The notes below the pieces were generated by a model. The model saw only the letters and a list, made by a program, of their open reading frames with translations. It was not told the DNA's origin and did not search any database. Made by a program: the position numbers and the translations under genes. A stretch of DNA of 64,000 bases, taken from positions 62,001 through 126,000 of the IMG/VR virus record IMGVR_UViG_3300042261_002385; one strand, 5' to 3'. Numbering within the stretch: position 1 is the stretch's first letter; the number at the start of each line of letters is the position of its first letter. This document shows, in pieces, positions 2,113 to 13,835 of the stretch.

Positions 2113-2121
2113 ATTTATTCG

Positions 2122-2194: not shown

Positions 2195-2205
2195 ATATTA
2201 TTTTG

Positions 2206-2290: not shown

Positions 2291-2824
2291 TAATCTTTCT
2301 AACCTTTTTTCTTCTTCTATATTATAATGTATTTCCCCATGGCAATTTCTACACACTAAAATACATTTATCAACTTCATTTTTTAATTTTTCAAAAGAAT
2401 GAGTTTTCCCACTTACTGAAAAATCTTTTTCTTTTGGGTTTCTATGATGAAATTCTAAAGATGATATACATTTATTATATCCACATAATTCACATTCACC
2501 ACCTTTATATTCAACTAGTCTAATCTTAACTCTTCTTCTCCATTCAATTACACTTTGAGAATTAGATTTTGATTCACTATAACTTCTATCTTTATACTTT
2601 TTGACAGTACTTATAGAAACGTTAAACTTTTCTGAAGCTTCTTTTATTGTATGTGTTTTACAATAGTTTTTTAACTCTTCTATATCAAATCTTCTTTCAG
2701 AATTTAATCCATATCTTTTACAATGATAACTAATTGTTGATTTTGATATGTTTAATTCTTTTTTTATTTCATCATAACTTTTACCTTCTTTTCTTAATTT
2801 TATTACTTTATCTTTAGTTTCCAT
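2285..2824 (-). CDS. HTH-containing HNH endonuclease (free-standing homing endonuclease-like)
   Basis: Two HTH-like segments, then CELCG...LEFHH...CILVCRNCHGEIH. Confidence 0.8.
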   Translation of the reverse strand: METKDKVIKLRKEGKSYDEIKKELNISKSTISYHCKRYGLNSERRFDIEELKNYCKTHTIKEASEKFNVSISTVKKYKDRSYSESKSNSQSVIEWRRRVKIRLVEYKGGECELCGYNKCISSLEFHHRNPKEKDFSVSGKTHSFEKLKNEVDKCILVCRNCHGEIHYNIEEEKRLERLR

Positions 2825-2888
2825 AGGTCTTAATTATTTTATGTTAAATATTAAAAATTAAAACCTTTTTAACCAAAGTGGTTAATTG

Positions 2889-2963
2889 CGGACTTGATAG
2901 GATTCGAACCTACTATCTTCTGCTTAACAGGCAGTAGCTTATGACCACTTAAGCTTCAAGTCC
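2889..2963 (-). tRNA. tRNA-Asn (GTT)
   Basis: CTGC-CTGTTAA-GCAG arm, G73. Confidence 0.9.
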
Positions 2964-2984
2964 TTTTATTAACTATATCAAAAC

Positions 2985-3015
2985 AAAAAACCCTCAGATT
3001 TTCATCTGAGGGTTC
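2985..3015 (-). terminator. Intrinsic terminator (attenuator 1) upstream of tRNA cluster 1
   Basis: GAACCCTCAGAT-GAAA-ATCTGAGGGTTT followed by a U tract. Confidence 0.9.
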
Positions 3016-3045: not shown

Positions 3046-3159
3046 TTACGAGACAAATTTTCTAAATAGATAGGAACCCTCAGAAGGTCTAATATTACAT
3101 AACGTAATATTCACCACATTGAGTGTCAGGTTCATCATATTTGTCGTATTTGTTCTCAT
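3046..3159 (-). CDS. Leader peptide 1, MRTNTTNMMNLTLNVVNITLCNIRPSEGSYLFRKFVS
   Basis: 37-aa ORF; first 24 codons use only the amino acids of the cluster-1 tRNAs; contains TCTGAGGGTTC, complementary to the terminator 5' arm. Confidence 0.85.
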   Translation of the reverse strand: MRTNTTNMMNLTLNVVNITLCNIRPSEGSYLFRKFVS

Positions 3160-3216
3160 TGTTGTTATATATTATAAATTATTAGTCTCTTTTGACTTTT
3201 TTGTCATTATTTTATA

Positions 3217-3248
3217 CAAATTTAAATAAAAGTTTTAATTCTACCAAA
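3217..3248 (-). promoter_or_regulatory. Bacteroidota-type housekeeping promoter
   Basis: TTTG-N20-TAAATTTG upstream of leader 1. Confidence 0.75.
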
Positions 3249-3259
3249 TTTAATCTAAA

Positions 3260-4615
3260 TTATTTTACTGGTGTCTCAGTTTTTTCACCAGGCTTAGCAA
3301 CTTCTGGTTTTTCACCAGGTTTCACAGGTGTCTGTTCTACAGGTTTTTCACCAGGCTTAGTCTCACTTTCTTTATGACCAGGTTTCAAATGATGAATTGT
3401 GTGATAAACGTGATAAATAGCAAATCCTATAGCAGCAACTGTAAGTAAAACTTTTATTGTTTTTCCAATTGGATCAGTCTCAGCATACAAATTAAAAGCG
3501 GCTAAAAACCATTTTTTCATATCCATAGCTGCTTCCATTCCCGGAAAAGGTGTAGCTCCTACAAGTAAACAAACATCACCAACTATACCAACTAAAGCAC
3601 CTACAATAGCACCTAAAGCTACAAATTTGAATGGACCGGGTCCACCAGCCCATTTAGATATCTTAGAAACAAAAGTAAGAGAAGCGTTTGTAACAACTTC
3701 ACCTACTAGTTCTGCAACTTTAACAATCAGTCCAAAAAAAGAAGATAAAACTCTAAGAATAAGTCTTCCCCACCATATTAGTTTTTTTCCAGTAGTTACC
3801 TCAGCATCTGGACTTTTTTCAATAAAACTCTTAAACCAATCAAGTAAAGAGTCGAATGCTGAAGACTTAACAGCCTTCACAACCTCACCTTCTTTAAGTA
3901 GTTGATAATCATAAAAATGTTTGATTAAATCATCACTCTCCGTATGTTCAATATATGATGAACTTTCTTCTACCTGATTCTCTGTCTCTTGTAGTTCTTT
4001 AAGTGTGGTTGATTCTATATTTCCTTCTCCAGATTGTAATGTAGCTGAAACTTTATTACCTAAATTAGGATTTATTTGGTTAGATTGTAATGCATCTTTT
4101 TTTTCATCACCAGTTCTTAAAAAGTTAAAAACACTTTTCAAATTCGGAATTTCTTGTTCAACTGTTTTCTTATCAGTAGATTCAATTTTTTTAGCTATAG
4201 CATCTTTTTTATCAACAGATAGCTTCTTTCCAAGATTAAGAGCTCCATTTAACATCCCCAAGAAAACATTCTTACAAAAAGTCATGATACCTTTTACAAA
4301 CCAAGAAATACCATCAATAATTTTCTTAACACGCTCTTTAAATGAATTTACAAATTTCTCTCCTTTATCTTTGACATAAGCAACTGCTTTATCTAAAAAC
4401 TGCCATTCTTCTTTTAATAGGTTGAATTTGGATTCTAAAAGTTCATTTTGGATAAACTTTTTTTCAGTATTATCAAAAATTTCAGATTTTAAACATAAAT
4501 TCCAAAAATTATCTGACAGTTCTTCATAAATTTGACCTTTTATTATAGAAGCCTGTTTATTTGCATGTTTTTTTTGTTCTTTAACAAAAGATTTATAATT
4601 TCTTACATAACTCAT
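3260..4615 (-). CDS. Hypothetical membrane protein with C-terminal KPGEKP repeats
   Basis: Long ORF with hydrophobic C-terminal helices; ATG at 4615 preferred. Confidence 0.7.
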   Translation of the reverse strand: MSYVRNYKSFVKEQKKHANKQASIIKGQIYEELSDNFWNLCLKSEIFDNTEKKFIQNELLESKFNLLKEEWQFLDKAVAYVKDKGEKFVNSFKERVKKIIDGISWFVKGIMTFCKNVFLGMLNGALNLGKKLSVDKKDAIAKKIESTDKKTVEQEIPNLKSVFNFLRTGDEKKDALQSNQINPNLGNKVSATLQSGEGNIESTTLKELQETENQVEESSSYIEHTESDDLIKHFYDYQLLKEGEVVKAVKSSAFDSLLDWFKSFIEKSPDAEVTTGKKLIWWGRLILRVLSSFFGLIVKVAELVGEVVTNASLTFVSKISKWAGGPGPFKFVALGAIVGALVGIVGDVCLLVGATPFPGMEAAMDMKKWFLAAFNLYAETDPIGKTIKVLLTVAAIGFAIYHVYHTIHHLKPGHKESETKPGEKPVEQTPVKPGEKPEVAKPGEKTETPVK

Positions 4616-4653
4616 ATTTGTAAACAACTTTTTGTTATATATTAAATACCCGA

Positions 4654-4818
4654 TTTATTTTTCTGAGCCTTTAATAATTTCCAATTCTCAACATCTCTTT
4701 CCATAAACTTTCTTATCCTTTTAGAGAAATTCATTGAGTTTTCATCACAAAATTGTTTATATTCTTCTAATAATTTTTCAGGGATTCTAATTGAAATCAT
4801 TTTATCTTTGGTTGCCAT
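4654..4818 (-). CDS. Ribbon-helix-helix (CopG/Arc-like) DNA-binding protein, 54 aa (absent from the ORF track)
   Basis: MATKDKMISIRIPEKLLEEYKQFCDENSMNFSKRIRKFMERDV...: beta strand ISIRI plus two helices. Confidence 0.75.
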
Positions 4819-4866
4819 AAATTATACATTTTTATACATATATATCTTTGTATGGACATTCCCTCA

Positions 4867-5421
4867 CTAAATATCTCTCAAAAAGTTAAAATCGGTTATA
4901 TCAAGTTTTAATCCTATGTTAAATCTGTTGAAAAAATCAACTAGTTTTTGTAGACTTTTATCTTCGATAGCAAAAATCGTATGTGTTGGATCGAATTTCG
5001 AATTATAACTTGTGTCTTGTATAACATGAACGCCTTTTCTACTTATAGAAAACTCAGACGCCATCATATCTCCAAATGTTATATCAACATCTAATCTCAT
5101 ATTTGGTATGTAACTACCAGGACTTCTATCATAGTCAAAAGTTCCTGATTTTATCACAGTAGTCTGGTCAATATGTTGTTCACCAGAATCATCTTTGACT
5201 AGATAAATATCAATTTCTAAAGTATCAGGAGCTAACCATCTGTTTATATCATAAGAGATTTGTAACATATCAGAGTTCAACATTACATTTCCTTTCTTAT
5301 ATTCCAATCTATCAATTCCATATTCCTCACCTTTCAAAACAACAATTGTTTCAGGTAATAAAACTTCCCATTTAGGATCATAAATACTAATATTCTCATT
5401 GAATCTACGAAGATATTTCAT
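4867..5421 (-). CDS. Hypothetical phage protein
   Basis: ORF with MKYLRRFNE N-terminus. Confidence 0.7.
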   Translation of the reverse strand: MKYLRRFNENISIYDPKWEVLLPETIVVLKGEEYGIDRLEYKKGNVMLNSDMLQISYDINRWLAPDTLEIDIYLVKDDSGEQHIDQTTVIKSGTFDYDRSPGSYIPNMRLDVDITFGDMMASEFSISRKGVHVIQDTSYNSKFDPTHTIFAIEDKSLQKLVDFFNRFNIGLKLDITDFNFLRDI

Positions 5422-5425
5422 TGCA

Positions 5426-6163
5426 TTATTTTAATTTTATCAAAATTGGTAAATGGTCAGAAAGAGAATTTCTATTTCCTTTGTAAGGATAAACTAAAAC
5501 TTTGCTCTCGACAATTGTGTACTTTTTTTCAACAAAAAAATGATCATAATTATTTTCTGAAACAGAACCATCTCTTTTAAGAGACGTTCCTAAACCACAT
5601 AGTGGTGAATTAAAGTTTTTTAACATAGGAACATAAACTAGATGTTTACAGCTTAAATTGAAGTCTCCACAAATCAAACCATCGGTATATTGATATAATT
5701 TAGAAACTTCGTTTTGAGGAGTTTTGCTTGTTGGAACCAAATGAACTTCTCTAATCACTAAGTCTTTTTTATTAATTTTGAAAGACGCCACAAAAGGTTC
5801 TCTATCAATTGAGTCCTGTAAAGAAGCATCTAATTTAGAATAATTTAATGTTATTGATTTTCTATAAAGATAAGCATATCTTTCAGCACCTTCCCCTGTA
5901 GTTCTTGGTGAAATTACATAATTATAATCTAATATTTTTGCCATTTTCATAATACAAGAGTCACCATAAGGACCAGTGATGACCTCTTGAATAGCTACTA
6001 TGTCAGCACCTGATGATTTAATTACAGTTGTTAATCCAGTAATGACCGAATCTCTTTTAAATTTAGTTTCACCTAAATTTTGTATGTTCCAAGAAAGGAT
6101 TGTTTGTGAATAAGATATGTATGATAATAAGATAATTATAAATAAGAAAATGTTTTTCATCAA
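5426..6163 (-). CDS. Secreted endonuclease/exonuclease/phosphatase (DNase I-like)
   Basis: Signal peptide; SWNI, AIQEV, GDFN, YDH, SDHLP motifs. Confidence 0.9.
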   Translation of the reverse strand: MMKNIFLFIIILLSYISYSQTILSWNIQNLGETKFKRDSVITGLTTVIKSSGADIVAIQEVITGPYGDSCIMKMAKILDYNYVISPRTTGEGAERYAYLYRKSITLNYSKLDASLQDSIDREPFVASFKINKKDLVIREVHLVPTSKTPQNEVSKLYQYTDGLICGDFNLSCKHLVYVPMLKNFNSPLCGLGTSLKRDGSVSENNYDHFFVEKKYTIVESKVLVYPYKGNRNSLSDHLPILIKLK

Positions 6164-6176
6164 AAGTGTTTTCTTT

Positions 6177-6332
6177 CTATTTATTAATTTTCACATTTGA
6201 TTTTAATTTTCTTTTTAATCTTTTTATCATTTTAACTATTAAATCTTCTTTATCTTTTTTGTCTGATTCCAAATATCTAAAATTTCCTTTACTACTTTTA
6301 ATCTCACCTGTTATTATTACTCTTTCTTCCAT
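6177..6332 (-). CDS. Small hypothetical protein (51 aa)
   Basis: ATG-to-TAG ORF filling the gap in a minus-strand run. Confidence 0.5.
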   Translation of the reverse strand: MEERVIITGEIKSSKGNFRYLESDKKDKEDLIVKMIKRLKRKLKSNVKINK

Positions 6333-6347
6333 CTCATTAAATTTTTT

Positions 6348-6530
6348 TTATATAAAACCTTTTATTGTATTATTTTCTATTCTGAACACTACAAAATCTT
6401 CTAATTTACATTTGTTTAAAATGTCACTTTGGTCTAATACCTTACCCTGAGGAAAAGCAGTAAGTGAACCATCAACATTTTTGTAGATGATATAAAGCTT
6501 ACTATCTGATTTTCTTTTAAAGATTGTCAT
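6348..6530 (-). CDS. Small hypothetical protein
   Basis: ORF track. Confidence 0.55.
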   Translation of the reverse strand: MTIFKRKSDSKLYIIYKNVDGSLTAFPQGKVLDQSDILNKCKLEDFVVFRIENNTIKGFI

Positions 6531-6547
6531 TCATTATATTATTTTTG

Positions 6548-6620
6548 AGCGAGAGATGAGGTTCGAACTCACGACCCCCACCTTGGCAAGGTGGCGCTCT
6601 ACCAGCTGAGCTACTCTCGC
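6548..6620 (-). tRNA. tRNA-Gly (GCC)
   Basis: CCACC-TTGCCAA-GGTGG arm, U73. Confidence 0.93.
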
Positions 6621-6630
6621 TTATTTGATG

Positions 6631-6706
6631 TGGACCAGATGGGAATCGAACCCACCACACCTACCTTGCAAGGGTAAGTCGCCGAAGCCTTGGAACATGC
6701 TAGCCC
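6631..6706 (-). tRNA. tRNA-Ala (TGC)
   Basis: G3:U70 pair; TTACC-CTTGCAA-GGTAG arm; atypical D arm. Confidence 0.88.
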
Positions 6707-6710
6707 GTAG

Positions 6711-6782
6711 TGCGGGTAACCAGAATCGAACTGACATCACCGACTTGGAAGGCCGGTGTAATAACCATTATACGATACCCGC
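6711..6782 (-). tRNA. tRNA-Gly (TCC)
   Basis: CCGGC-CTTCCAA-GTCGG arm. Confidence 0.92.
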
Positions 6783-6793
6783 ATGTATTTCTG

Positions 6794-6874
6794 TCGGCAA
6801 GGTGGGATTCGAACCCACGTTTTCAACTTCCCGCTACGTGTATAGAATGTATAAGATTCCAACGGTACTTGCCG
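6794..6874 (-). tRNA. Non-canonical tRNA-like RNA with a TAT (Ile AUA) anticodon-like loop
   Basis: Perfect CGGCAAG/CTTGCCG acceptor and T arm; GGAAT-CTTATAC-ATTCT hairpin sits where the D arm should be. Confidence 0.6.
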
Positions 6875-6875
6875 A

Positions 6876-6909
6876 AATAAAAAAACCCAGTCCTTTTGAG
6901 ACTGGGTTT
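6876..6909 (-). terminator. Intrinsic terminator (attenuator 2)
   Basis: AAACCCAGTCT-CAAAA-GGACTGGGTTT plus U tract, directly upstream of cluster 2. Confidence 0.88.
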
Positions 6910-6930
6910 ATAAATATGTAAAGTCAAATA

Positions 6931-7014
6931 TTACATAACATAACTCAGTCTATAGACTTGACGCCCCGCGCCTGTCGCTATAAATCCAACTGATATGTTT
7001 GTAAAATTTTTCAT
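6931..7014 (-). CDS. Leader peptide 2, MKNFTNISVGFIATGAGRQVYRLSYVM
   Basis: ATA, GGA, ATA, GCG, GGC, GCG, GGG control codons; AGACTGAGTT antiterminator. Confidence 0.78.
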   Translation of the reverse strand: MKNFTNISVGFIATGAGRQVYRLSYVM

Positions 7015-7067
7015 TGTTTCTATTATATTTGTTATATATAAAAAGTTTTATTTCTTCTTTTATTTTG

Positions 7068-7150
7068 TTGGAAGGGAGGGATTCGAACCCCCGTACTCGT
7101 AAGAGAACAGATTTACAGTCTGTCGGTTTTAGCCACTCACCCACCTTCCA
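7068..7150 (-). tRNA. tRNA-Tyr (GTA)
   Basis: ACAGA-CTGTAAA-TCTGT arm, long variable arm. Confidence 0.93.
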
Positions 7151-7161
7151 ATAAAGCTTTG

Positions 7162-7233
7162 TAGTCCATACGGGAATCGAACCCGTCTCTCCACCGTGAA
7201 AGGGTGGTGTCCTAGCCGATAGACGAATGGACC
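7162..7233 (-). tRNA. tRNA-Glu (TTC)
   Basis: CCACC-CTTTCAC-GGTGG arm. Confidence 0.93.
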
Positions 7234-7252
7234 GTTTATCTGTTTTGTTTTA

Positions 7253-7284
7253 CAAAGATAAGGTAACTTTTCTAATCTACCAAA
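7253..7284 (-). promoter_or_regulatory. Bacteroidota-type promoter between attenuator 3 and tRNA-Glu
   Basis: TTTG-N20-TATCTTTG. Confidence 0.7.
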
Positions 7285-7293
7285 TCTTTAAAT

Positions 7294-7323
7294 AAAAAAA
7301 CCCAATCTTTTCAGACTGGGTTT
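7294..7323 (-). terminator. Intrinsic terminator (attenuator 3)
   Basis: AAACCCAGTCT-GAAA-AGATTGGGTTT plus U tract. Confidence 0.88.
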
Positions 7324-7343
7324 GTTAAAAGTAAATCAAATAT

Positions 7344-7415
7344 TTACAACACGCAAACTAGTCCGATTGGATTACTACCCTCGGCTTCATAATAATATGT
7401 TGTTATCATTTTCAT
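7344..7415 (-). CDS. Leader peptide 3, MKMITTYYYEAEGSNPIGLVCVL
   Basis: TAT-TAT-TAT-GAA-GCC-GAG run upstream of tRNA-Glu and tRNA-Tyr. Confidence 0.82.
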   Translation of the reverse strand: MKMITTYYYEAEGSNPIGLVCVL

Positions 7416-7436
7416 GCTTTGATTAATTATTTTTAG

Positions 7437-7509
7437 TAGCGGGGGTAGGACTCGAACCTACGACCTCTAGGTTATGAGCCTAGCGAGCTACCAACTACTC
7501 CACCCCACA
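7437..7509 (-). tRNA. Initiator-type tRNA-fMet (CAT)
   Basis: U1:U72 mismatch, fMet-like D arm, CTAGG-CTCATAA-CCTAG arm. Confidence 0.88.
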
Positions 7510-7593
7510 ATGTGTTATTGTATGTGTATATATAAAAAAAGTTTTCTCTATTTCTTTATTTTAAAGGATTTTTCAACTTAATATATAATTTGT

Positions 7594-8061
7594 ATGAGAT
7601 ATTTAACAGATTTTGGTCAATTTTTATATGAAGAACTACAATCTTATCAGTTTGAACTAATTTCAGACGATCGATTCATTTACAAATACTCATTTCAAGA
7701 TGTTGTAGGTAATAAATATTTAGTTGAATTTAAAAATATTCCTATAAGAAAAGTTGGTCAATTAAGTCACGTTTATGAATTAATGTATTATGTAGAAGAT
7801 GAGGGACAATATTCAGTTTATAAAATTGTAAATGTAAATCCTTATAGAGTTTTGAAAACTGTTTTTGGGGATATCTTAAATGATTTCACAAAAAGATGTC
7901 AGTGGGCTAAAATTATTTATTTTGTTGGATTAGCCAAAGAAAAAGAAAAACAATATGTCACATCAAGAACTAGAATATATAAAAGATATTTAGATATGAA
8001 TCCTGTTTCTGGCTTTAGAATTCAACAATCAGGAAATGCAATACAATTAACAAGAATATGA
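7594..8061 (+). CDS. Hypothetical phage protein
   Basis: ORF after an AATATATA motif. Confidence 0.7.
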   Translation: MRYLTDFGQFLYEELQSYQFELISDDRFIYKYSFQDVVGNKYLVEFKNIPIRKVGQLSHVYELMYYVEDEGQYSVYKIVNVNPYRVLKTVFGDILNDFTKRCQWAKIIYFVGLAKEKEKQYVTSRTRIYKRYLDMNPVSGFRIQQSGNAIQLTRI

Positions 8062-8459
8062 AACACTTAAAAAAGATATTTGAAAGTAGTGAAGATGATA
8101 AAAGATACATCGAAGAATGTTTCTTAGAGATATCAGAGAATCCAAACTTCGAAGTTGATGATTTACTTGAAGTAGAATTGACCGAAAAAGTAGATTATCC
8201 AATTTCAGTATATAAATTACACATAGAATTTGGTAAAAATATAAGTTTACCTAATCCAGTAAATTCTAATCTTTATATTGGAATGGTAAAAACTGATTTA
8301 GATTTCTTAAGAATGAAGAATGAAAAAATATCCGAGTTATTAAATGATATTGAAGTTGCTATAAATAGAGTTGGCGAAAAATTTCCTAATTCAGAATGTC
8401 AAATCTATGCGAATAGAAGAGAAGAGATTGATATAGTAATAATTGTAAAAAATAATTAA
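8058..8459 (+). CDS. Hypothetical phage protein
   Basis: ORF with MKHLKKIFES N-terminus. Confidence 0.7.
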   Translation: MKHLKKIFESSEDDKRYIEECFLEISENPNFEVDDLLEVELTEKVDYPISVYKLHIEFGKNISLPNPVNSNLYIGMVKTDLDFLRMKNEKISELLNDIEVAINRVGEKFPNSECQIYANRREEIDIVIIVKNN

Positions 8460-8464
8460 ATATT

Positions 8465-8830
8465 ATGGAAAGACCGCAAACAAGAATTATAGACCAACAA
8501 CACGTTGAATCAGAAAGAGAAGTTACTGGATGGGAAGCGGAACAAATACTAAGAAAATACGGACACGAACCTAAACACTATTCATCAATTCCAGGTAACA
8601 CACCTCAGAGTCCTAATCATAATTTAACTTTTGAAGAAATGATTGCACAAGAAGAAGCTAAACGTAAAGAGGAAATGATGAGAAATCAACAACAAATGAA
8701 TGGTCCTAAACCATTGACTTTTGATGGCGGCCGTGGTTATGATTCTGAGATTAGGTATTCGACTGATGAAGATACTGGATTTGGTTTTAAGATTGAGATA
8801 TCTACTGATATGAAAATTCCAAAATATTAA
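8465..8830 (+). CDS. Hypothetical protein
   Basis: ORF track. Confidence 0.65.
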   Translation: MERPQTRIIDQQHVESEREVTGWEAEQILRKYGHEPKHYSSIPGNTPQSPNHNLTFEEMIAQEEAKRKEEMMRNQQQMNGPKPLTFDGGRGYDSEIRYSTDEDTGFGFKIEISTDMKIPKY

Positions 8831-9435
8831 ATCTTTTGAAAAACTACAATATCATCGATTTGAATTTTCTTTACACCTTGTAATTCTGTAAGAACTCCAT
8901 GTAGGCCTAATCCAGCGTTTTTGTTTTCAATAAGAATTGAACCCGGTGCAATCTCTGAAATAATCTTATTATATAACAGTGTAAGTTTTTCAGTTGTCTT
9001 GAAAGGAGTATAGGTATAGACAATGTTATATTTGGAATAGTCTTGATTCATTATATCATCTTCAATTACAGTAAGATTACTATCCCAATATTGAAGAAGT
9101 TTTTCGTTTAGAAAATCAATATAAACTTTTTGTTTCTCAATTCCATAGAATTTAAAAGTCTTACCATCTTCAAATAATTTTGACTGTTGATACATATCAA
9201 AAAGAGCTGTTCCTAATCCTATTCCACAATCACAAATATGATTTTCTTGTAGTAGTAATCCTCTTTCTTCAAGTCTCTGAAGAAGAAATATATTTAATTC
9301 AATATTAGATAGAACATAGTGCCACTCTTCATTTTGGATAAACTCTGGTTTTGAACTATCAAAATCAGTCCAAAGAGTTTTAGAATCCTGAAAATATTTG
9401 ACTAAGTTTTCATTCGGTGTAACTTCTTGTGCCAT
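8827..9435 (-). CDS. Class I SAM-dependent methyltransferase-like protein
   Basis: ICDCGIGLG motif I, GIE, DDI; paralog at 43335. Confidence 0.7.
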   Translation of the reverse strand: MAQEVTPNENLVKYFQDSKTLWTDFDSSKPEFIQNEEWHYVLSNIELNIFLLQRLEERGLLLQENHICDCGIGLGTALFDMYQQSKLFEDGKTFKFYGIEKQKVYIDFLNEKLLQYWDSNLTVIEDDIMNQDYSKYNIVYTYTPFKTTEKLTLLYNKIISEIAPGSILIENKNAGLGLHGVLTELQGVKKIQIDDIVVFQKI

Positions 9436-9519
9436 ATAAGTTATATCTATTTTTATATTTAAGTTGTCTATAAAAGAACTCTCTAAAGATAATATATAGT
9501 GTATAAAATAATTTATCTA

Positions 9520-12423
9520 ATGAGCAGTATAGCTTTTGGTAGCACATATTCTTTTTTAACTGCAGCTACGCCATCATCTGGATGGATCATTGGTTTTGAT
9601 ACAGATGGTGTATTAAAGCAAATTGACACATCTGGAAACATTATACTAATAGGTGGTGGACCTACTGCTGGAAATTTAGCAACATATTCTATTTCACAAG
9701 TCTTAACTGTTGGTAATAATACTCAGAATCGTTCCATTATTATGGGAACAGCTACTAACATCAAAAGTGCAAACGGCGGTGGTAAAATTGAGTTAGACCG
9801 TTTAAGTGGAACAAATTCAGTTTTAATATCGACTGATGATAGTTCACAATCTGAAAGTTACTTATTGATGAGGAATGATTATGCAAGACTGTCTACTGAT
9901 TCATCTAAACAGATGATTGATTTGAATAAAACTGATAATGACCTGCGAATTTATAATAACAATGCTGGGTCAATATCAATAGGAGTAGATACAGGTTCTT
10001 TAGTTTACGGCCAGCTAGATGAAATTAAGATATCTTATAACTCTTCATCAACAGCTTCTACTGGTAATTTTGATAAAAATGCCGTTTTAATTGGTTCAAA
10101 AAACTCAAAAATACTTTCAGGAGTTGTTAACACAGTAGTTTTAGGAGGTCAAAATTTTACCGCCTCTAATTCGAATTCAATTTATGTTCCGGATATTTAT
10201 TTACAAAATCAAAAAGGAATAAAGTCGACTAATACAAATGAAGTATTCTATTTGAATGATAATAACGGATACACATTGTTGGACAGAAACTCAGGTAACT
10301 TAGATAATTCTTGGTTACTTATGGCAACTGACTATAATTCTACTTATCAAGCTTATGTTGAAATTGGTGTAAACTCAGACTCCGGATATGGAAATGATTC
10401 TCAAATCTATATCTATAACTCTAAAGGACCATCATATAGTTATCAAGCATATTCAAGTATTACTGTCGGTAAAAATCTTCTTAGATTTGCTTCTCAAGAT
10501 GTCGATGGTGGGTTAGATACAGTTAGAATAAATTTATCAGCTGGTAATTCTATAACTGTTGATGGATCGACTTCTTCTTTTAAAGGTATGGAGTATAATG
10601 ATGATTATTCTCTAAATTTTGTGACACATTCACTTGTAGATAAACAATATGTAGATAGTCAATTTACAGGATTTAATTTAGATGTTGTCCTAGCAGCTGG
10701 AAATAACTCACAGGCTAACGACATCGTTATGGGCACAGCTACAAGTATAAAATCAGCTAATGGTGGAGGTCAAATAGATTTAGACTTATCAGGAAATGCT
10801 GATGAAGTTGTAATATCAACAGATGGTGGAGCTCAAGCAGAATCATTTATTTCTTTGACTGCAACTGACTTATTAATTCAATCAGTTGGTAATATAACTT
10901 TGGATGGTCAAGGTCTAAGAGCATCATCAAACGACTCTTTAGGTATTGTATATCAAGCTGATTATTCGGCTACTTTTATAACACAATCATTAGTGAATAA
11001 AGGATATGTAGACTCAGGAACATCTTCTTTATGGTCAGCAATAAACTCAATTAATACTGATTATATCTCAGAAATAATACCTGGGACAGGTCTTACAGGC
11101 GGTGGAACTTATGGAACGATAAACATAGATATTGAGATAGGTAATGGTTTACAATTTGTAACTAACTCGATTTCATTAGGTGGAACTCTTTCACAAGATA
11201 CAATCATAATAGGAGATTCATTTAATTTCACTTTAGATGAATTAACAAACATAAGTTTAAGTGCGTCTGGAATCATTGACAATTATGCAACAGACTTGTC
11301 GGGATTCTTCGGAGAAACTTATTTAGATTCAAATGTTTTTGAGGCTAAAGTAGGAACCATACATGGTAACACATTTTCGAGAGTAGTAATTCAGAATCAC
11401 GTTTTACTTCTTGAAAACCAAAATGAAATCGGAGATTCGACTAGTTACGGTTTATACTTAAACGAACAAACTATTGGTGACGGTTCAACTGATAATAGAT
11501 TAATAATTAATGACGAAGTTTCTCAGAAAGGTTTAGTTTACTCACAAGATTATACATCTAATTTCACAACATATTCATTAGTTAGTAAAGGATATGCTGA
11601 TTCTTTATTAAGTAGAGTTGAAAATGGTTTAACACAGAGTCCAAACGGAAATATTATGTTAGGTGGAAGTCTGAACACAGCAGTTGTAATTGAAGGATTT
11701 ACTAATAATGTGTATTTCTCAGACGTTGGTAGATTTTCAGTAACTGCGTCTGGTTTTATAGACAAAATGGTTTACGCACCGTCAACAAATACTAGTCAAC
11801 AATTTAATAATGGTGACCAATACTACACAAGAGTGGATGATGCTTTAGGAACTTATTCACTAATAAATTTAGATCCGAGTAGAGTAGATGTTGAAAATTT
11901 AGGTGACGATGGATACCTTACTAAATTCACTATATATTCATCTGGTCAGAGTATAGGTGACCAATCGTCAAATAATAGATTTATAGTGACTGATGATAGT
12001 TATCAAAAAGGAATAGTTTATTCTGATGACTACACTGCAAACTTTACTACTTACTCATTAGTTACTAAACAATATGTTGATTCAAAAAAACCGTATAAAG
12101 TTTATGTAGCTCTTCTTAAACAATCCGGAACCTCAGCACCAACAGATATTGTATTAGAGAACACCTTTGGAATAACAGCTACTTTTAGCTACACTACAAC
12201 AGGTAATTACGAGTTGTATATGACAGGTCAATTTACTTATCAAAAAACATACATAGTAAATGGAATTGCTGATCAAAACCCAATAGGTGGGGATTTTGCC
12301 TTATTTGCAACTCAATACTTTAATACTGATAAAATAATACTTACTACCCAAGATATAGGTGGAACTGGACCAATGAACGGTTTACTAAACGACACATCAA
12401 TTGAAATCAGAGTGTATCCGTAA
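9520..12423 (+). CDS. Repeat-rich virion fibre/adhesin-like protein
   Basis: Four DYxxxFxTxSLVxKxY(V/A)DS repeats and duplicated MGTATxIKSANGGG modules. Confidence 0.65.
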   Translation: MSSIAFGSTYSFLTAATPSSGWIIGFDTDGVLKQIDTSGNIILIGGGPTAGNLATYSISQVLTVGNNTQNRSIIMGTATNIKSANGGGKIELDRLSGTNSVLISTDDSSQSESYLLMRNDYARLSTDSSKQMIDLNKTDNDLRIYNNNAGSISIGVDTGSLVYGQLDEIKISYNSSSTASTGNFDKNAVLIGSKNSKILSGVVNTVVLGGQNFTASNSNSIYVPDIYLQNQKGIKSTNTNEVFYLNDNNGYTLLDRNSGNLDNSWLLMATDYNSTYQAYVEIGVNSDSGYGNDSQIYIYNSKGPSYSYQAYSSITVGKNLLRFASQDVDGGLDTVRINLSAGNSITVDGSTSSFKGMEYNDDYSLNFVTHSLVDKQYVDSQFTGFNLDVVLAAGNNSQANDIVMGTATSIKSANGGGQIDLDLSGNADEVVISTDGGAQAESFISLTATDLLIQSVGNITLDGQGLRASSNDSLGIVYQADYSATFITQSLVNKGYVDSGTSSLWSAINSINTDYISEIIPGTGLTGGGTYGTINIDIEIGNGLQFVTNSISLGGTLSQDTIIIGDSFNFTLDELTNISLSASGIIDNYATDLSGFFGETYLDSNVFEAKVGTIHGNTFSRVVIQNHVLLLENQNEIGDSTSYGLYLNEQTIGDGSTDNRLIINDEVSQKGLVYSQDYTSNFTTYSLVSKGYADSLLSRVENGLTQSPNGNIMLGGSLNTAVVIEGFTNNVYFSDVGRFSVTASGFIDKMVYAPSTNTSQQFNNGDQYYTRVDDALGTYSLINLDPSRVDVENLGDDGYLTKFTIYSSGQSIGDQSSNNRFIVTDDSYQKGIVYSDDYTANFTTYSLVTKQYVDSKKPYKVYVALLKQSGTSAPTDIVLENTFGITATFSYTTTGNYELYMTGQFTYQKTYIVNGIADQNPIGGDFALFATQYFNTDKIILTTQDIGGTGPMNGLLNDTSIEIRVYP

Positions 12424-12424
12424 G

Positions 12425-12510
12425 CGGAGAGCAGAATACTCGAAACCCATGCAATTGAACGCACCCAACGCTTTCCAGGCGTGACTGATGACCTCATCAG
12501 TTTACTCTCC
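12425..12510 (-). tRNA. tRNA-Ser (GGA), 8/4 fold
   Basis: ACGC-CTGGAAA-GCGT arm; 8-bp acceptor, 7-bp D stem with 4-nt loop, 4-bp T stem. Confidence 0.82.
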
Positions 12511-12517
12511 AATTTAG

Positions 12518-12603
12518 CGGAGAACAGAGGAATTGAACCCCACACAAATGAACGTGCAACTCGCTTAGCAGGCGGTCCTAATCACCAGATTAGTTTATTC
12601 TCC
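12518..12603 (-). tRNA. tRNA-Ser (GCT), 8/4 fold
   Basis: CGC-CTGCTAA-GCG; CTAATC-TGGT-GATTAG D arm; G73. Confidence 0.82.
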
Positions 12604-12609
12604 ATTTAG

Positions 12610-12693
12610 CGGAAGAAGTAGGTGTCGATCCCAATACCTTTCAGTACCCACAGTTTTCAAGACTGGGTTGCAGGCCGCTGCAATTCATCTTCC
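12610..12693 (-). tRNA. tRNA-Ser (TGA), 8/4 fold
   Basis: CAGT-CTTGAAA-ACTG; TTGCAG-CGGC-CTGCAA D arm; G73. Confidence 0.82.
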
Positions 12694-12699
12694 AATTTG

Positions 12700-12772
12700 T
12701 GGTTCTAGAAGTATTCGAAACCTCACTTGATCGTTCGTAGCGACCTGTCCTGTCCAATTAGACGATAGAACC
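12700..12772 (-). tRNA. tRNA-Arg (ACG)
   Basis: GGTCG-CTACGAA-CGATC arm. Confidence 0.9.
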
Positions 12773-12780
12773 AAATTTAA

Positions 12781-12908
12781 CGGGGATGGTTGGACTCGAA
12801 CCAACGACCTTATAATTTCAAAATATACGAAGTAACTCTTTCAATCAACACTCTTACGAGGTAAAGTTTCAAAAGAGATAGTTTTCTCTACCACTGAGCT
12901 AAATCCCC
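12781..12908 (-). ncRNA. 128-nt tRNA-like RNA with a large structured insertion in the anticodon domain
   Basis: Near-canonical acceptor, D arm (GCTCAGTGGTAGAG) and T arm (GTTGG-TTCGAGT-CCAAC) flank about 55 extra nt. Confidence 0.7.
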
Positions 12909-12919
12909 AATAACATTTG

Positions 12920-12994
12920 TGACTCCGGTGGGACTCGAACCCACATATCCCTGATTAAGAGTCAGGTCCGGAAACCAATTACGGATACGAAGTC
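12920..12994 (-). tRNA. tRNA-Lys (CTT)
   Basis: CCTGA-CTCTTAA-TCAGG arm. Confidence 0.88.
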
Positions 12995-12999
12995 ATTTG

Positions 13000-13087
13000 T
13001 GCACCCAGAAGGACTCGAACCTTCAACGGACTTTCGTCTACCCCTCGCATTAAAAGTGCGATGCTCTACCAATTGAGCCATAGGTGC
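13000..13087 (-). tRNA. tRNA-Lys (TTT) with long variable arm
   Basis: TCGCA-CTTTTAA-TGCGA arm; 20-nt variable region containing GAC-GAAA-GTC. Confidence 0.85.
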
Positions 13088-13100
13088 TTAATTACCTTAG

Positions 13101-13173
13101 TGACCCCGGCGAGAATCGAACTCGCGACCCCCTGGTTAAAAGCCAGGTGCTCTACCTACTAAGCTACGAAGTC
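13101..13173 (-). tRNA. tRNA-Lys (TTT)
   Basis: CCTGG-CTTTTAA-CCAGG arm. Confidence 0.93.
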
Positions 13174-13216
13174 AAATTTTTTCTATGTGATGACTTATAA
13201 CTTAGTAAGCCATCAC

Positions 13217-13240
13217 TTAGCGTTTTCGTTTAGTTTCCAT
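13217..13240 (-). CDS. Candidate mini leader ORF METKRKR
   Basis: ATG GAA ACT AAA CGA AAA CGC TAA after an A-rich tract, followed by an 11-bp hairpin, upstream of the Lys/Arg tRNAs. Confidence 0.45.
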   Translation of the reverse strand: METKRKR

Positions 13241-13258
13241 TTTCTTTTTTATTTTTAG

Positions 13259-13329
13259 CACGTCGCCTAGGAATTGAACCCAGCCATCGAGGTTTTGGAG
13301 ACCTGACCGACACCTTGTCTGTGCGACGT
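13259..13329 (-). tRNA. tRNA-Trp (CCA), short D arm
   Basis: AGGT-CTCCAAA-ACCT arm, G73. Confidence 0.82.
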
Positions 13330-13336
13330 ATGTTTG

Positions 13337-13410
13337 GGTGAACGACGGGTTACGATCCCGCTACCTCTGGCTTCACAAACCAGCACTCTTCCGATTGAGC
13401 TACATTCACC
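13337..13410 (-). tRNA. tRNA-His (GTG)
   Basis: G-1:C73 pair; CTGGT-TTGTGAA-GCCAG arm; T loop ATCGTAA. Confidence 0.9.
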
Positions 13411-13415
13411 ATATA

Positions 13416-13487
13416 AACCCCACTTCACCAGGTTAACGGACTGGCTGCCATATGGGAGTGGGGGTCTCCTGTTATTCCAGGACTCCG
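13416..13487 (-). ncRNA. GC-rich structured RNA of unknown class, 3' of tRNA-Phe
   Basis: TCCTG/CAGGA, CCCCACT/AGTGGGG and CCAG/CTGG stems; possible ACGGA/TCCGT pseudoknot; strand inferred from context. Confidence 0.5.
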
Positions 13488-13560
13488 TGGAATGGGTGGG
13501 TATCGAGCCCACTCCTCTGGATTTTCAGTCCAGCGCAATTACCTAATCTGCCACCATTCC
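13488..13560 (-). tRNA. tRNA-Phe (GAA)
   Basis: CTGGA-CTGAAAA-TCCAG arm. Confidence 0.9.
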
Positions 13561-13573
13561 AATTTTTTTAAAT

Positions 13574-13607
13574 AAAAAAACCCGAACTTCTTTCGAGGTT
13601 CGGGTTT
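13574..13607 (-). terminator. Intrinsic terminator (attenuator 4)
   Basis: AAACCCGAACCTC-GAAA-GAAGTTCGGGTTT plus U tract. Confidence 0.9.
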
Positions 13608-13630
13608 AAATTATATTGTCTTTTATAAGT

Positions 13631-13732
13631 TTACACTTCTAAATTTGAGCAATACTCTTTTAGTACCGAACCAGTGGTGCTAAACCACGAAGTCGATTTA
13701 CTAAATGTGCTATGTTTGCGAATTGCTCTCAT
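13631..13732 (-). CDS. Leader peptide 4, MRAIRKHSTFSKSTSWFSTTGSVLKEYCSNLEV
   Basis: R/K/H/S/F/W-rich control region; GGTTCGG antiterminator. Confidence 0.85.
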   Translation of the reverse strand: MRAIRKHSTFSKSTSWFSTTGSVLKEYCSNLEV

Positions 13733-13789
13733 TTTTTTTATATATTGAATTGTTAAACTCTCTTTTTAAATTATTGTCATTATTCTATA

Positions 13790-13821
13790 CAAATGTAGAT
13801 AAAAGTTTTTAATCTACCAAA
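13790..13821 (-). promoter_or_regulatory. Bacteroidota-type promoter upstream of leader 4
   Basis: TTTG-N20-TACATTTG; closely similar to 3217-3248. Confidence 0.75.
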
Positions 13822-13835
13822 TTTTTTTGAAATTT

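What the first reader, a model, noticed from the sequence alone, without database searches (positions are those of the whole stretch)
3200..13825. Attenuator and promoter cassettes appear duplicated and re-programmed
Terminators 2 and 3 share AAACCCAGTCT and a similar stop-to-hairpin spacer (plus strand gtaaagtcaaatattaca vs gtaaatcaaatatttaca), yet their control codons differ completely. The promoter blocks upstream of leaders 1 and 4 are closely similar over about 50 nt (ttgtcattat-tatacaaat-ta-ataaaagtttt...ctaccaaattt). This suggests one ancestral module was copied and its sensor codons adapted to each tRNA set.
Basis: partly seen in the sequence, partly recalled or inferred. Interest (0 to 1): 0.6.

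Follow-up and report, generated by a model that had tools for sequence, protein, structure and literature searches.

The report
Codon-matched attenuators gating phage tRNAs
A giant freshwater phage puts, in front of each block of its tRNA genes, a tiny test reading frame and a stop-or-go RNA hairpin; the frame's codons are the ones read by the tRNAs behind it, and the switches are related copies with different codon content, so the phage could make each set of tRNAs only when that set runs short.

Summary
P1 and P4 are the most similar pair among 2207 promoter-like pairs in the 436 kb genome. The T2 and T3 cassettes are the most similar of 2391 terminator pairs, although their shared 11-mer alone is within background.

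These are leader-peptide transcription attenuators on the minus strand. Each has a Bacteroidetes-type promoter, a 23-37 codon frame and an intrinsic terminator directly before a tRNA array. A segment inside the frame can pair with the terminator's 5' arm. The frame's codons are those read by the downstream tRNAs (identity assignment rank 1 of 120 here, 1 of 5040 in LR745206.1).

A fifth cassette lies outside the window. Homologous cassettes occur in at least 25 related contigs. In relatives the same design precedes ileS, asnS, leuS and lysS with Ile, Asn, Leu and Lys codons.

Copy-and-reprogram is partly supported. L1, L4 and L5 share a promoter and 5' UTR module. L2 and L3 align over their whole length except the control codons. 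Both paralogies are old and shared by relatives. Nothing links all four to one ancestor. The promoter family also serves an ordinary gene elsewhere.

All evidence is computational. I found no prior description in five library searches.

The parts
3217..3248 (-). Promoter P1: -33 TTTG (3245-3248) and -7 TAnnTTTG (3217-3224), 20 nt apart.
   Evidence: Pattern scan; profile R1 hit E 6.5e-21; orthologous promoters in five other contigs.
3160..3216 (-). 5' UTR of leader 1, homologous to that of leader 4. It contains the genome-wide AATATATAA gene-start box.
   Evidence: Alignments A1 and A3; motif statistics.
3046..3159 (-). Leader ORF L1 (37 codons). Of codons 2-24, 21 are read by the downstream Asn, Ile, Arg, Leu, Val, Cys and Thr tRNAs; the other two are ATG.
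   Evidence: max-segment P below 5e-5. Orthologs are 88% identical in the ORF region.
3073..3085 (-). Antiterminator strand (region 2) of cassette 1: an 11-nt exact copy of the terminator's 3' arm, inside the ORF.
   Evidence: Duplex -20.5 kcal/mol versus -7.7 for shuffles, p=0.003; truncated-RNA fold.
2980..3015 (-). Terminator T1: 12-bp hairpin at 2988-3015 plus T-run, 24 nt before tRNA-Asn.
1370..2963 (-). tRNA array 1: Asn, an inserted HTH ORF, then Ile, Arg, Leu, Asn, Val, Ile, Cys, Thr, Leu, Leu.
   Evidence: ARAGORN and Rfam.
7436..7509 (-). tRNA-Met, directly upstream of leader 3 with no promoter between them in this genome.
7344..7415 (-). Leader ORF L3 (23 codons) with control run Tyr-Tyr-Tyr-Glu-Ala-Glu. 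Region 2 is at 7353-7366.
   Evidence: P about 1e-3; p=0.023.
7290..7323 (-). Terminator T3 (hairpin 7298-7323 plus T-run). Its 5' arm shares the 11-mer with T2.
7253..7284 (-). Promoter P3b, located after T3 and 19 nt before tRNA-Glu. In relatives the homologous promoter lies before the leader, so this cassette is rearranged.
   Evidence: R1 hit E 1.3e-3.
7067..7233 (-). tRNA-Glu(TTC) and tRNA-Tyr(GTA).
6931..7014 (-). Leader ORF L2 (27 codons) with a control run rich in Ile-ATA, Gly and Ala. Region 2 is at 6941-6952.
   Evidence: It has no promoter of its own and follows tRNA-Tyr.
6875..6909 (-). Terminator T2 (hairpin 6883-6909 plus T-run).
   Evidence: The identical hairpin occurs in contigs L026 and L035.
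6547..6874 (-). tRNA array 2: an Ile(TAT)-like tRNA with an extra arm (low confidence), Gly(TCC), Ala(TGC) (low confidence), Gly(GCC).
   Evidence: Relatives have confident Ile(TAT), Gly and Ala calls at the same place.
13790..13821 (-).
   Evidence: R1 hit E 7.9e-21.
13631..13732 (-). Leader ORF L4 (33 codons) with a control run of Arg, Lys, His, Ser, Phe and Trp codons. Region 2 is at 13665-13673.
   Evidence: p=0.017. 13 orthologs are aligned in A4.
13570..13607 (-). Terminator T4 (hairpin 13578-13607 plus T-run), 17 nt before tRNA-Phe.
12425..13560 (-). tRNA array 4: Phe, His, Trp (low confidence), three Lys, Arg(ACG), type-II Ser-like tRNAs and several non-canonical tRNA-like stretches.
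13187..13240 (-). Nested mini-ORF (7 codons, Lys/Arg rich, 13217-13240) followed at once by a hairpin without a U-run (13187-13216), just before the three Lys tRNAs.
   Evidence: It is conserved in three relatives with different hairpin sequences.

Best explanation
The region holds four members (a fifth lies at genome 48700-48850) of a family of ribosome-dependent transcription attenuators that gate the phage's tRNA gene arrays.

Proposed mechanism. Host RNA polymerase starts at a Bacteroidetes-type promoter and transcribes a short leader frame. If the ribosome runs through the frame, region 2 is covered or paired with region 1. The terminator then forms and the tRNA genes are not transcribed. 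If the ribosome stalls on the control codons because the matching charged tRNAs are scarce, region 2 stays free and pairs with the terminator's 5' arm. Transcription then continues into the array. Each array is thus made on demand.

Proposed evolution. The family grew by copying cassette parts and replacing the control codons. L1, L4 and L5 share one promoter plus 5' UTR module. L2 and L3 share the whole frame scaffold, spacer and terminator. These copies are old and conserved across a clade of huge freshwater phages.

Shown: anatomy, codon match, pairing potential, homology and conservation. Inferred: translation of the leaders, termination, read-through on stalling, and the direction of regulation.
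For: (1) Anatomy. Of about 50 intrinsic terminators in 436 kb, only the five before tRNA arrays follow a 23-37 codon ORF. All the others that have an upstream frame end ordinary genes or chance frames.

(2) Codon match. The identity assignment of leaders to arrays ranks 1 of 120 in this genome and 1 of 5040 in LR745206.1. Clustered-run P is below 5e-5 for L1, about 1e-3 for L3 and about 4e-4 for L5 using confident tRNAs only.

(3) Isoacceptor level. Leaders use ATT 21/21 before Ile-GAT arrays and ATA 8/9 before Ile-TAT-only arrays. They use ACA/ACG 22/22 before Thr-TGT arrays.

(4) Alternative pairing. In all five cassettes, RNA truncated before the 3' arm pairs the 5' arm with a segment in the last third of the ORF. 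The full RNA instead folds into a region 1:2 helix plus the terminator. The duplex beats shuffles at p<0.05 in 16 of 26 cassettes (Fisher 2e-15). Own leader with own terminator ranks 1 of 40320 in LR745206.1 and 3 of 120 here.

(5) Co-variation of leaders with arrays across genomes. Where relatives split an array, a new leader appears: a Gln-run leader before three tRNA-Gln, and Ser/Arg-run leaders before Arg and Ser tRNAs.

(6) The same design precedes aaRS genes with cognate codons: Ile to ileS, Asn to asnS, Leu to leuS, Lys to lysS.

(7) Homology. P1/P4 and L2/L3 similarity are reported. Profile R1 finds only the five tRNA-cluster upstream regions in the genome at E<0.1.

(8) Promoters fit -33 TTTG / -7 TAnnTTTG. 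The relatives' clade is predicted to infect Bacteroidetes (PMC7162821).
Against: - There are no expression data. The laid runs are contigs and show no transcript ends.
- In this genome promoter P3b lies after T3, so Glu and Tyr can escape attenuator 3.
- The L2 and L4 statistics need low-confidence tRNA calls (P 0.2 and 0.075 with confident calls only).
- L4 carries four Thr codons with no Thr tRNA identified in its array.
- Antiterminator complementarity is weak in L5 and L2 here (p 0.31 and 0.12) and in some short leaders.
- Orthologs are not independent, so pooled P values overstate the support.
- Within the L4 family the pairing core is invariant, so it gives almost no covariation.
- The A-rich N-termini shared by all leaders may reflect initiation requirements rather than descent.
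- The promoter family also drives an ordinary gene in L012/L023.
Confidence: 0.72

Rival explanations
1. There is no special relationship. The similarities are what any two promoters and any two terminators of this AT-rich genome share, and the short ORFs are chance frames.
For: Terminators are stereotyped (AAACCC...GGGTTT), and 32 of 2278 pairs share 10 nt or more of the 5' arm. The AATATATAA box is genome-wide.
Against: P1/P4 lies 11 sd above the promoter background, and T2/T3 ranks first of 2391. The ORFs are conserved as ORFs in 49 cassettes. The codon-to-array match ranks 1/120 and 1/5040.
Confidence: 0.03
2. The cassettes are attenuators, but the likeness of P1 and P4 is convergence or constraint. 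Both must bind the same polymerase, sigma factor or regulator, and a dyad sits in the spacer. They would then not be copies of one module, and the leaders were assembled independently behind a standard early promoter.
For: The same promoter family precedes leaderless tRNAs (genome 37219, 37068) and an ordinary gene in L012/L023. Paralogs within LR745206.1 are more alike (87-91%) than orthologs between genomes (75-84%), and they share genome-specific states such as TTAG versus TTTG. This fits co-adaptation to one trans factor.
Against: The similarity runs about 55 nt past the -7 element through a UTR with no known protein-binding role, up to the first three codons. Concerted evolution of true paralogs explains the genome-specific states equally well.
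Confidence: 0.15
3. The T2/T3 likeness in this genome is mainly recent sequence exchange (gene conversion) between two neighbouring cassettes 415 nt apart, on top of the old paralogy.
For: The 3' parts of L2 and L3 are 79% identical here, versus 67-72% in five other genomes. The 3' part of the window's L3 is as close to L2-type copies (67-79%) as to L3 orthologs (63-75%). The L3 cassette is also rearranged in this lineage.
Against: Diagnostic sites are few and mixed. T2 here is identical to T2 of L026 and L035, and T3 keeps L3-type states such as the G-U pair in the stem. The excess is about 10 positions.
Confidence: 0.3
4. The hairpins are plain terminators or insulators between transcription units, and the short ORFs encode small functional peptides. 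There is no sensing of tRNA supply.
For: T3 is followed by its own promoter here, so it could simply end the tRNA-Met unit.
Against: T1, T2, T4 and T5 have no promoter between hairpin and first tRNA; the gaps are 5-24 nt or are filled by a tRNA-like sequence. Across orthologs the amino-acid composition of the control run is kept while the order changes. The codon sets match the arrays and the aaRS genes.
Confidence: 0.05

Closest known systems
Leader-peptide transcription attenuators of amino-acid biosynthesis operons (trpL, hisL, leuL, thrL, ilvL, pheL of Proteobacteria)
   Same: A short ORF with a run of regulatory codons, an intrinsic terminator before the regulated genes, and mutually exclusive 1:2, 2:3 and 3:4 pairings. 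The read-out is ribosome stalling on codons whose charged tRNA is scarce (established knowledge; anatomy tested).
   Different: The regulated genes are tRNAs, not enzymes. The control run mixes up to eight amino acids, chosen codon by codon to mirror an array of anticodons. The ORF runs through region 2 and ends 20-33 nt before the hairpin. The setting is a phage and a Bacteroidetes-type promoter. There is no match to any Rfam leader family.
pheST (pheM leader) attenuator of E. coli phenylalanyl-tRNA synthetase
   Same: Leader-peptide attenuation applied to a translation-apparatus gene. The relatives' Ile, Asn, Leu and Lys leaders before ileS, asnS, leuS and lysS follow this logic.
   Different: Those are single-amino-acid sensors for a synthetase. 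The cassettes in the window control tRNA genes themselves.
T-box riboswitches
   Same: A terminator/antiterminator choice that reports the charging state of a specific tRNA and controls translation-related genes.
   Different: T-box RNA binds uncharged tRNA directly through one specifier codon, without translation. Here there is a start codon, a conserved ORF and many codons, and no T-box hit in Rfam.
Phage tRNA gene clusters (for example T4 and the huge phages of Al-Shayeb et al. 2020)
   Same: Arrays of phage-encoded tRNAs, sometimes with homing-endonuclease-like ORFs and small stable RNAs between them.
   Different: No codon-sensing leader has been described for them to my knowledge. The huge-phage paper contains neither 'attenuat' nor 'leader', and five library searches found nothing.

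Membership tests
Leader-peptide transcription attenuator (trpL/hisL type) | Short ORF with start codon between promoter and regulated genes | tested here: met
   23-37 codon ATG ORFs at 3046-3159, 6931-7014, 7344-7415 and 13631-13732. They are kept as ORFs in 49 cassettes of related contigs. The genome's gene-start motif lies before the ATG.
Leader-peptide transcription attenuator (trpL/hisL type) | Clustered regulatory codons tied to the function of the regulated genes | tested here: met
   Codon runs match the downstream anticodons, with rank 1/120 and 1/5040. Ile ATT versus ATA is specific to the isoacceptor.
Leader-peptide transcription attenuator (trpL/hisL type) | Intrinsic terminator between the leader and the regulated genes, with no promoter in between | tested here: met
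   Met for T1, T2, T4 and the fifth cassette. Not met for T3 in this genome, where promoter P3b follows the hairpin. Met for T3 orthologs in four relatives.
Leader-peptide transcription attenuator (trpL/hisL type) | Antiterminator that competes for the terminator's 5' arm and is itself masked by translation or by region 1 | tested here: met
   Folds of truncated versus full RNA in all five cassettes. Duplex versus shuffles gives Fisher 2e-15, and own versus foreign arms rank 1/40320. The pairing is weak for L5 and L2 of this genome.
Leader-peptide transcription attenuator (trpL/hisL type) | Read-through rises when the cognate charged tRNA is limiting | not testable with these tools
   Only contigs were available for the runs that hold this DNA.
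Rfam leader families (Trp, His, Leu, Thr, Phe leaders) and T-box | Covariance-model match | tested here: not met
   No such hit at gathering score or at E up to 1 in 1300-14000.
Bacteroidetes primary-sigma promoter | -33 TTTG and -7 TAnnTTTG about 19-20 nt apart | tested here: met
   P1, P3b and P4 and 18 homologs have a 20-nt spacing. The transcription start was not determined.
One paralogous cassette family by descent | Sequence similarity beyond the shared functional motifs | tested here: inconclusive
   Met within L1/L4/L5 (promoter plus UTR, z 10-24) and within L2/L3 (whole length, z 17; 67-79% in six genomes). Not met between the two groups (z 0.2-4.7).

The most novel reading that the evidence does not exclude
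A clade of huge Bacteroidetes phages runs a modular, codon-programmable homeostat for its own translation apparatus. Every tRNA array, and several aminoacyl-tRNA synthetase genes, sits behind a leader frame whose codon list mirrors the anticodons or amino acid it controls. The phage would thus sense which decoding capacities the infected cell lacks, for example after host shut-off or tRNA-cleaving defence, and transcribe just those arrays. New sensors would arise by copying a cassette and rewriting its codon run whenever arrays split or gain tRNAs.
Probability: 0.6. Interest if true: 0.85.

Novelty: new variant of a known kind. Interest (0 to 1): 0.75.

Why it matters
How phages regulate their large tRNA sets is an open question, and tRNA genes are generally taken to be made constitutively. 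A leader frame that reads out the supply of exactly the tRNAs it controls would be direct feedback control of tRNA genes by translation. It would be multi-codon and isoacceptor-specific.

It would make testable the idea that phage tRNAs compensate for depleted or cleaved host tRNAs. It also gives a natural series of re-programmed sensors: the same scaffold with different codon lists, plus split arrays that carry new leaders. Such a series shows how attenuators evolve, and it could serve as a design template for codon-specific biosensors in Bacteroidetes.

Tried and rejected
- Rfam at gathering score and at E up to 1 gave no known leader, T-box or other cis-regulatory family, only tRNAs and chance hits.
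- Five literature searches found nothing on leader peptides before tRNA genes.
- Sequencing runs: the DNA occurs in lake, freshwater, lagoon and drinking-water metagenomes of 15 studies. All the runs I laid were contigs, so they gave no transcript starts, ends or levels. One metatranscriptome library holds contigs over cassettes 1 and 2, but that does not show transcription.
- Covariation counting in the 13-sequence L4 alignment was uninformative. The antiterminator and terminator cores are invariant except in one copy, which MAFFT places one register off. I therefore did not run the count of structure pairs.
- Diagnostic-site analysis to decide whether the window's L3 3' part was converted by L2 gave 11 mixed sites and was inconclusive.
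- ARAGORN at low thresholds on the gaps between tRNAs gave unstable calls. Several tRNA-like stretches remain unassigned.
I repeated the analysis from stored coordinates only.
- One Pfam call failed on a wrong coordinate and was corrected.
- No alternative genetic code was used.

Full report
SETTING. The window is bases 62001-126000 of a single 436,265-bp contig with 31% G+C. IMG/VR holds it as a virus record with a CheckV completeness estimate of 95%. Its nearest public relatives are the 634,780-bp and 642,428-bp 'uncultured phage' genomes LR745206.1 and LR756502.1. Those lengths match the largest genomes of Al-Shayeb et al. 2020. That paper places its genomes above 634 kb in the Mahaphage clade and predicts that they replicate in Bacteroidetes (PMC7162821). 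Near-identical DNA occurs in lake, freshwater, lagoon, estuary and drinking-water metagenomes from 15 studies. All 22 confidently called tRNA genes of the window lie on the minus strand, so everything below is read on that strand.

THE OBSERVATION.
- The two spacers are at plus 6918-6935 and 7331-7348. Each runs from near a hairpin into the stop codon of a short minus-strand ORF.
- The shared 11-mer is the 5' arm of the hairpins at 6883-6909 (T2) and 7298-7323 (T3).
- The promoter blocks are at about 3201-3252 (P1) and 13774-13824 (P4).

Whole-cassette local alignments give z = 23.6 for cassettes 1/4 and 17.4 for 2/3 against shuffles. The other pairs inside the window give 0.2-4.7.

I built both backgrounds to apply it.
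- Among 67 TTTG-N17-23-TAnnTTTG sites (2207 pairs), P1/P4 scores 78. The next best is 50, with mean 17.7 and sd 5.5.
- Among 70 terminator-like hairpins (2391 pairs), T2/T3 ranks first at 67. The next is 60, with mean 20.8 and sd 8.1.

Two parts of the observation turn out to be generic.
- Almost all terminators here have the form AAACCC...GGGTTT, and 32 of 2278 pairs share at least 10 nt of the 5' arm. The shared 11-mer alone is therefore background, and the spacer alone ranks 7 of 2258.
- The AATATATAA box before both start codons is a genome-wide gene-start motif. ATATATA lies at -40..-1 of 138 of 433 long ORFs, against 1.4% expected.

WHAT THE CASSETTES ARE. Each consists of a short ATG ORF, a 20-33 nt spacer, and a 10-13 bp G+C-rich hairpin with a T-run. 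The ORFs are L1 at 3046-3159, L2 at 6931-7014, L3 at 7344-7415 and L4 at 13631-13732. A tRNA array follows within 5-24 nt, or after a tRNA-like stretch.

P1 and P4 fit the Bacteroidetes primary-sigma consensus: -33 TTTG, a 20-nt spacer, and -7 TAnnTTTG. L2 has no promoter of its own and is read from the Glu/Tyr unit upstream.

A fifth cassette lies outside the window at genome 48700-48850, before tRNA-Gln, Asp and Pro.

In the whole genome these five are the only terminators preceded by a 23-37 codon ORF and followed by tRNAs. Nearly all other terminators end long ORFs.

CODON MATCH.
- In L1, 21 of codons 2-24 are read by the array behind it (Asn, Ile, Arg, Leu, Val, Cys, Thr). The two exceptions are ATG.
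- L3 has three Tyr and two Glu codons in a run of six, before tRNA-Glu and tRNA-Tyr.
- L2 has Ile-ATA, Gly and Ala codons, before an Ile(TAT)-like tRNA, Gly, Ala and Gly.
- L4 has Arg, Lys, His, Ser, Phe and Trp codons, before Phe, His, Trp, three Lys, Arg and Ser-like tRNAs.
- The fifth leader has a run of Pro, Gln and Asp codons.

Assigning each leader to its own array gives the best total of all 120 permutations. Clustered-run P values against genome codon usage are below 5e-5 (L1), about 1e-3 (L3) and about 4e-4 (L5) with confident tRNAs only. L2 and L4 reach about 1e-3 and below 5e-5 only when low-confidence tRNA calls are admitted; otherwise they are 0.2 and 0.075.

The test repeats independently in LR745206.1, where seven cassettes give rank 1 of 5040.

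The match is at codon level, not amino-acid level. This holds over 49 cassettes from all loci.
- Leaders before arrays with tRNA-Ile(GAT) use ATT in 21 of 21 Ile codons.
- Leaders before arrays with only tRNA-Ile(TAT) use ATA in 8 of 9.
- Leaders before Thr(TGT) arrays use only ACA/ACG (22 of 22).

Orthologs are not independent, so these counts represent a handful of lineages.

ALTERNATIVE STRUCTURES. For all five cassettes, RNA truncated just before the terminator's 3' arm folds so that the 5' arm pairs with a segment in the last third of the ORF (region 2). The full RNA instead folds into a helix between region 2 and the control-codon region (region 1), plus the terminator.
- In L1, region 2 is an exact 11-nt copy of the 3' arm (-20.5 kcal/mol against -7.7 for dinucleotide shuffles).
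- Over 26 cassettes the duplex beats shuffles at p<0.05 in 16 (Fisher 2e-15, not independent).
- Pairing is specific. Own leader with own terminator ranks 1 of 40,320 permutations in LR745206.1 and 3 of 120 here, where L2, L3 and L5 have related stems.
- In the LR756502.1 copy of L4, region 2, the 5' arm and the 3' arm have changed together. Otherwise the L4 cores are invariant and uninformative.

This is the classical arrangement, and the following steps are inference. A ribosome stalled on the control codons frees region 2, which captures the 5' arm and lets polymerase read on. Smooth translation, or no translation, gives termination.

RELATIVES. Homologous cassettes occur in several sets of loci.
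- LR745206.1: loci L001, L002, L010, L011.
- LR756502.1: loci L003, L009.
- Three IMG/VR contigs: L004-L006.
- Metagenome contigs among the 24 fetched as L012-L035; 18 of these carry a promoter-linked cassette.

The control runs keep their amino-acid composition while the order drifts. That is the behaviour of sensor codons rather than of a functional peptide.

Where arrays are organised differently, the leaders differ accordingly.
- LR745206.1 has a separate leader made almost only of Gln codons before three tRNA-Gln genes.
- Several genomes have a Ser/Arg-run leader before the Arg(ACG) and Ser tRNAs. One has 13 Ser codons. In the window these tRNAs sit behind L4, whose run includes Arg and many Ser codons.

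In relatives the same cassette type also precedes aminoacyl-tRNA synthetase genes with cognate codons.
- An Ile run precedes ileS (TIGR00392, 1e-131).
- An Asn-rich leader precedes asnS (TIGR00457, 394 bits against a cutoff of 343).
- A leader with three Leu codons precedes leuS (TIGR00396, 4e-116).
- A Lys-rich leader precedes a lysS-like gene (3.8e-129).

That is the logic of the E. coli pheST attenuator. It is strong circumstantial evidence that the family senses charged-tRNA supply.

DUPLICATED AND RE-PROGRAMMED? Promoter plus 5' UTR (about 106 nt up to the third codon) is 75-87% identical among L1-, L4- and L5-type cassettes, whether paralogs or orthologs. After that the ORFs fall into clean orthogroups: L1 at 88%, L4 at about 70%, and L1 versus L4 at about 40%, which is no better than chance.

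A sequence profile of this module finds five places in the 436 kb at E<0.1. They are P1, P4, the fifth cassette (1.9e-5), P3b (1.3e-3) and the promoter of the tRNA cluster at 37.2 kb (0.02). All five lie before tRNA genes.

L2 and L3 align from start codon to T-run in all six genomes that have both. The shared parts are:
- the N-terminal codons;
- a G+C-rich centre;
- the antiterminator and the stop region;
- the spacer;
- an ACCCAGTC-type stem.

Only the control run is exchanged. Their 3' parts are 67-72% identical within five other genomes and 79% here.

So there are two old paralog groups in which a common scaffold carries different codon programmes.

Three qualifications apply.
- Nothing significant links the two groups, so a single ancestor of all four is not shown.
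- The copies predate the divergence of these phages, so this is not a recent duplication. A modest extra likeness of L2 and L3 in this lineage may reflect exchange between the neighbouring cassettes, but diagnostic sites are mixed.
- The promoter is a family that also drives leaderless tRNAs and an ordinary small gene in L012/L023. Paralogs within one genome also share genome-specific states such as TTAG versus TTTG at -33. That fits concerted evolution or adaptation to one polymerase. Part of the P1/P4 likeness may therefore be constraint.

A LOCAL ODDITY. In four relatives the order is tRNA-Met, promoter, leader 3, terminator, Glu/Tyr tRNAs. In this genome leader 3 starts 20 nt after tRNA-Met, and the homologous promoter (7253-7284) lies after T3, 19 nt before tRNA-Glu. 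Here the Glu/Tyr tRNAs can thus be made without passing attenuator 3. That attenuator would act only on transcripts coming from the tRNA-Met unit.

COMPARISON WITH KNOWN SYSTEMS AND NOVELTY. The mechanism proposed is that of trpL/hisL-type leader-peptide attenuation, and of pheST for a translation gene. The anatomy meets the testable defining features, but no Rfam leader or T-box model matches. Three things are new:
- the target, which is tRNA gene arrays in a phage;
- the multi-amino-acid, isoacceptor-specific control run that mirrors an array;
- the visible series of re-programmed copies.

Five full-text searches and the huge-phage paper gave no earlier description. The library does not cover all journals.

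I rate it a new variant of a known kind. I put 0.72 on the combined statement (attenuators with array-matched codons, diversified from shared scaffolds). All evidence is computational. Translation of the leaders, termination at the hairpins and the response to tRNA supply remain to be shown.

LIMITS.
- Several tRNA-like stretches in arrays 2 and 4 are not confidently assigned.
- L4 has four Thr codons without an identified Thr tRNA.
- Pooled statistics over orthologs overstate independence.
- The laid sequencing runs were contigs only (4701 letters, within the operators' limit).

Noticed in passing
G000:C1:48700-48850 (locus L007, minus strand), outside the window: A fifth leader-terminator cassette lies directly before tRNA-Gln, Asp and Pro. 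Its 31-codon ORF has a run of Pro, Gln and Asp codons. Its 5' UTR matches the P1/P4 module (E 1.9e-5), but the -33/-7 promoter is degenerate.
   Followed up: yes
L002:10399-11901 and 2194-3510; L011:4248-5772; L025:346-1756 (relatives, minus strands): In related phages the same cassette type precedes aminoacyl-tRNA synthetase genes with cognate codons: an Ile run before ileS, an Asn-rich leader before asnS, a Leu triplet before leuS, and a Lys-rich leader before a lysS-like gene.
   Followed up: yes
window 13187-13240 (minus strand): A 7-codon mini-ORF rich in Lys and Arg codons ends at the foot of a 11-bp hairpin that has no U-run, just before the three tRNA-Lys genes. A 9-codon Lys-rich counterpart with a hairpin of different sequence sits at the same place in L001, L003 and L006. 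Its function is unknown. The ribosome at the stop codon would melt the hairpin, which is the opposite geometry to the main attenuators.
   Followed up: partly
window 7253-7415: Cassette 3 is rearranged relative to four relatives. The promoter that normally precedes the Tyr/Glu leader lies after its terminator here, so the Glu and Tyr tRNAs can bypass the attenuator.
   Followed up: yes
whole genome; for example window 3165-3173, 7576-7590, 14070-14080: (T)AATATATA(A) lies 11-13 or 25-32 nt before the ATG of about a third of long ORFs (138 of 433, against 1.4% expected). It is probably a phage-specific promoter or initiation signal, distinct from the host-type -33/-7 promoters.
   Followed up: partly
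window 3225-3244, 7261-7280, 13798-13817 and homologs in L001-L011: The spacers of the tRNA-array promoters carry a dyad whose arms differ between promoters but stay complementary (GTAGA/TCTAC, GGTGA/TCACC, GGTA/TACC). This could be an operator or a nucleic-acid hairpin. It is unexplained.
   Followed up: partly
window 13410-13486, 12780-12909, 12425-12517, 12611-12693, 6783-6880, 6621-6709: These stretches between called tRNAs look tRNA-like but are non-canonical. One has a roughly 60-nt insert in the anticodon region. One is a 77-nt structured RNA with no cloverleaf call. There are also type-II Ser-like or Sec-model hits, and an Ile(TAT)-like tRNA with an extra arm.
   Followed up: partly
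window 2285-2824 (minus strand): A 179-aa ORF lies inside tRNA array 1. It has an N-terminal helix-turn-helix (Pfam HTH_28, 2e-9) and a Cys/His-rich C-terminus that resembles an HNH nuclease. It is probably a homing-endonuclease-like insertion between tRNA-Asn and tRNA-Ile.
   Followed up: partly
G000:C1:37118-37204 (locus L008): ARAGORN calls a tRNA with a four-base anticodon (agta) of undetermined identity. It sits behind its own host-type promoter and is followed by a second promoter and a tRNA-Met. Neither has a leader.
   Followed up: no
L001:1799-2122 and L003 minus-strand 6956-7290: A 14-codon leader (His-Thr-Tyr-Lys motif) has a strongly complementary antiterminator (p 0.003-0.007). 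It precedes a 65-67 aa very basic protein with no Pfam match. This would be an attenuator of the same build with a non-tRNA, non-synthetase target.
   Followed up: partly
window 5426-6163 and 1012-1338 (minus strand): Two ordinary genes lie between and next to the arrays. One is a signal-peptide-bearing endonuclease/exonuclease/phosphatase family protein. The other is a thioredoxin.
   Followed up: no
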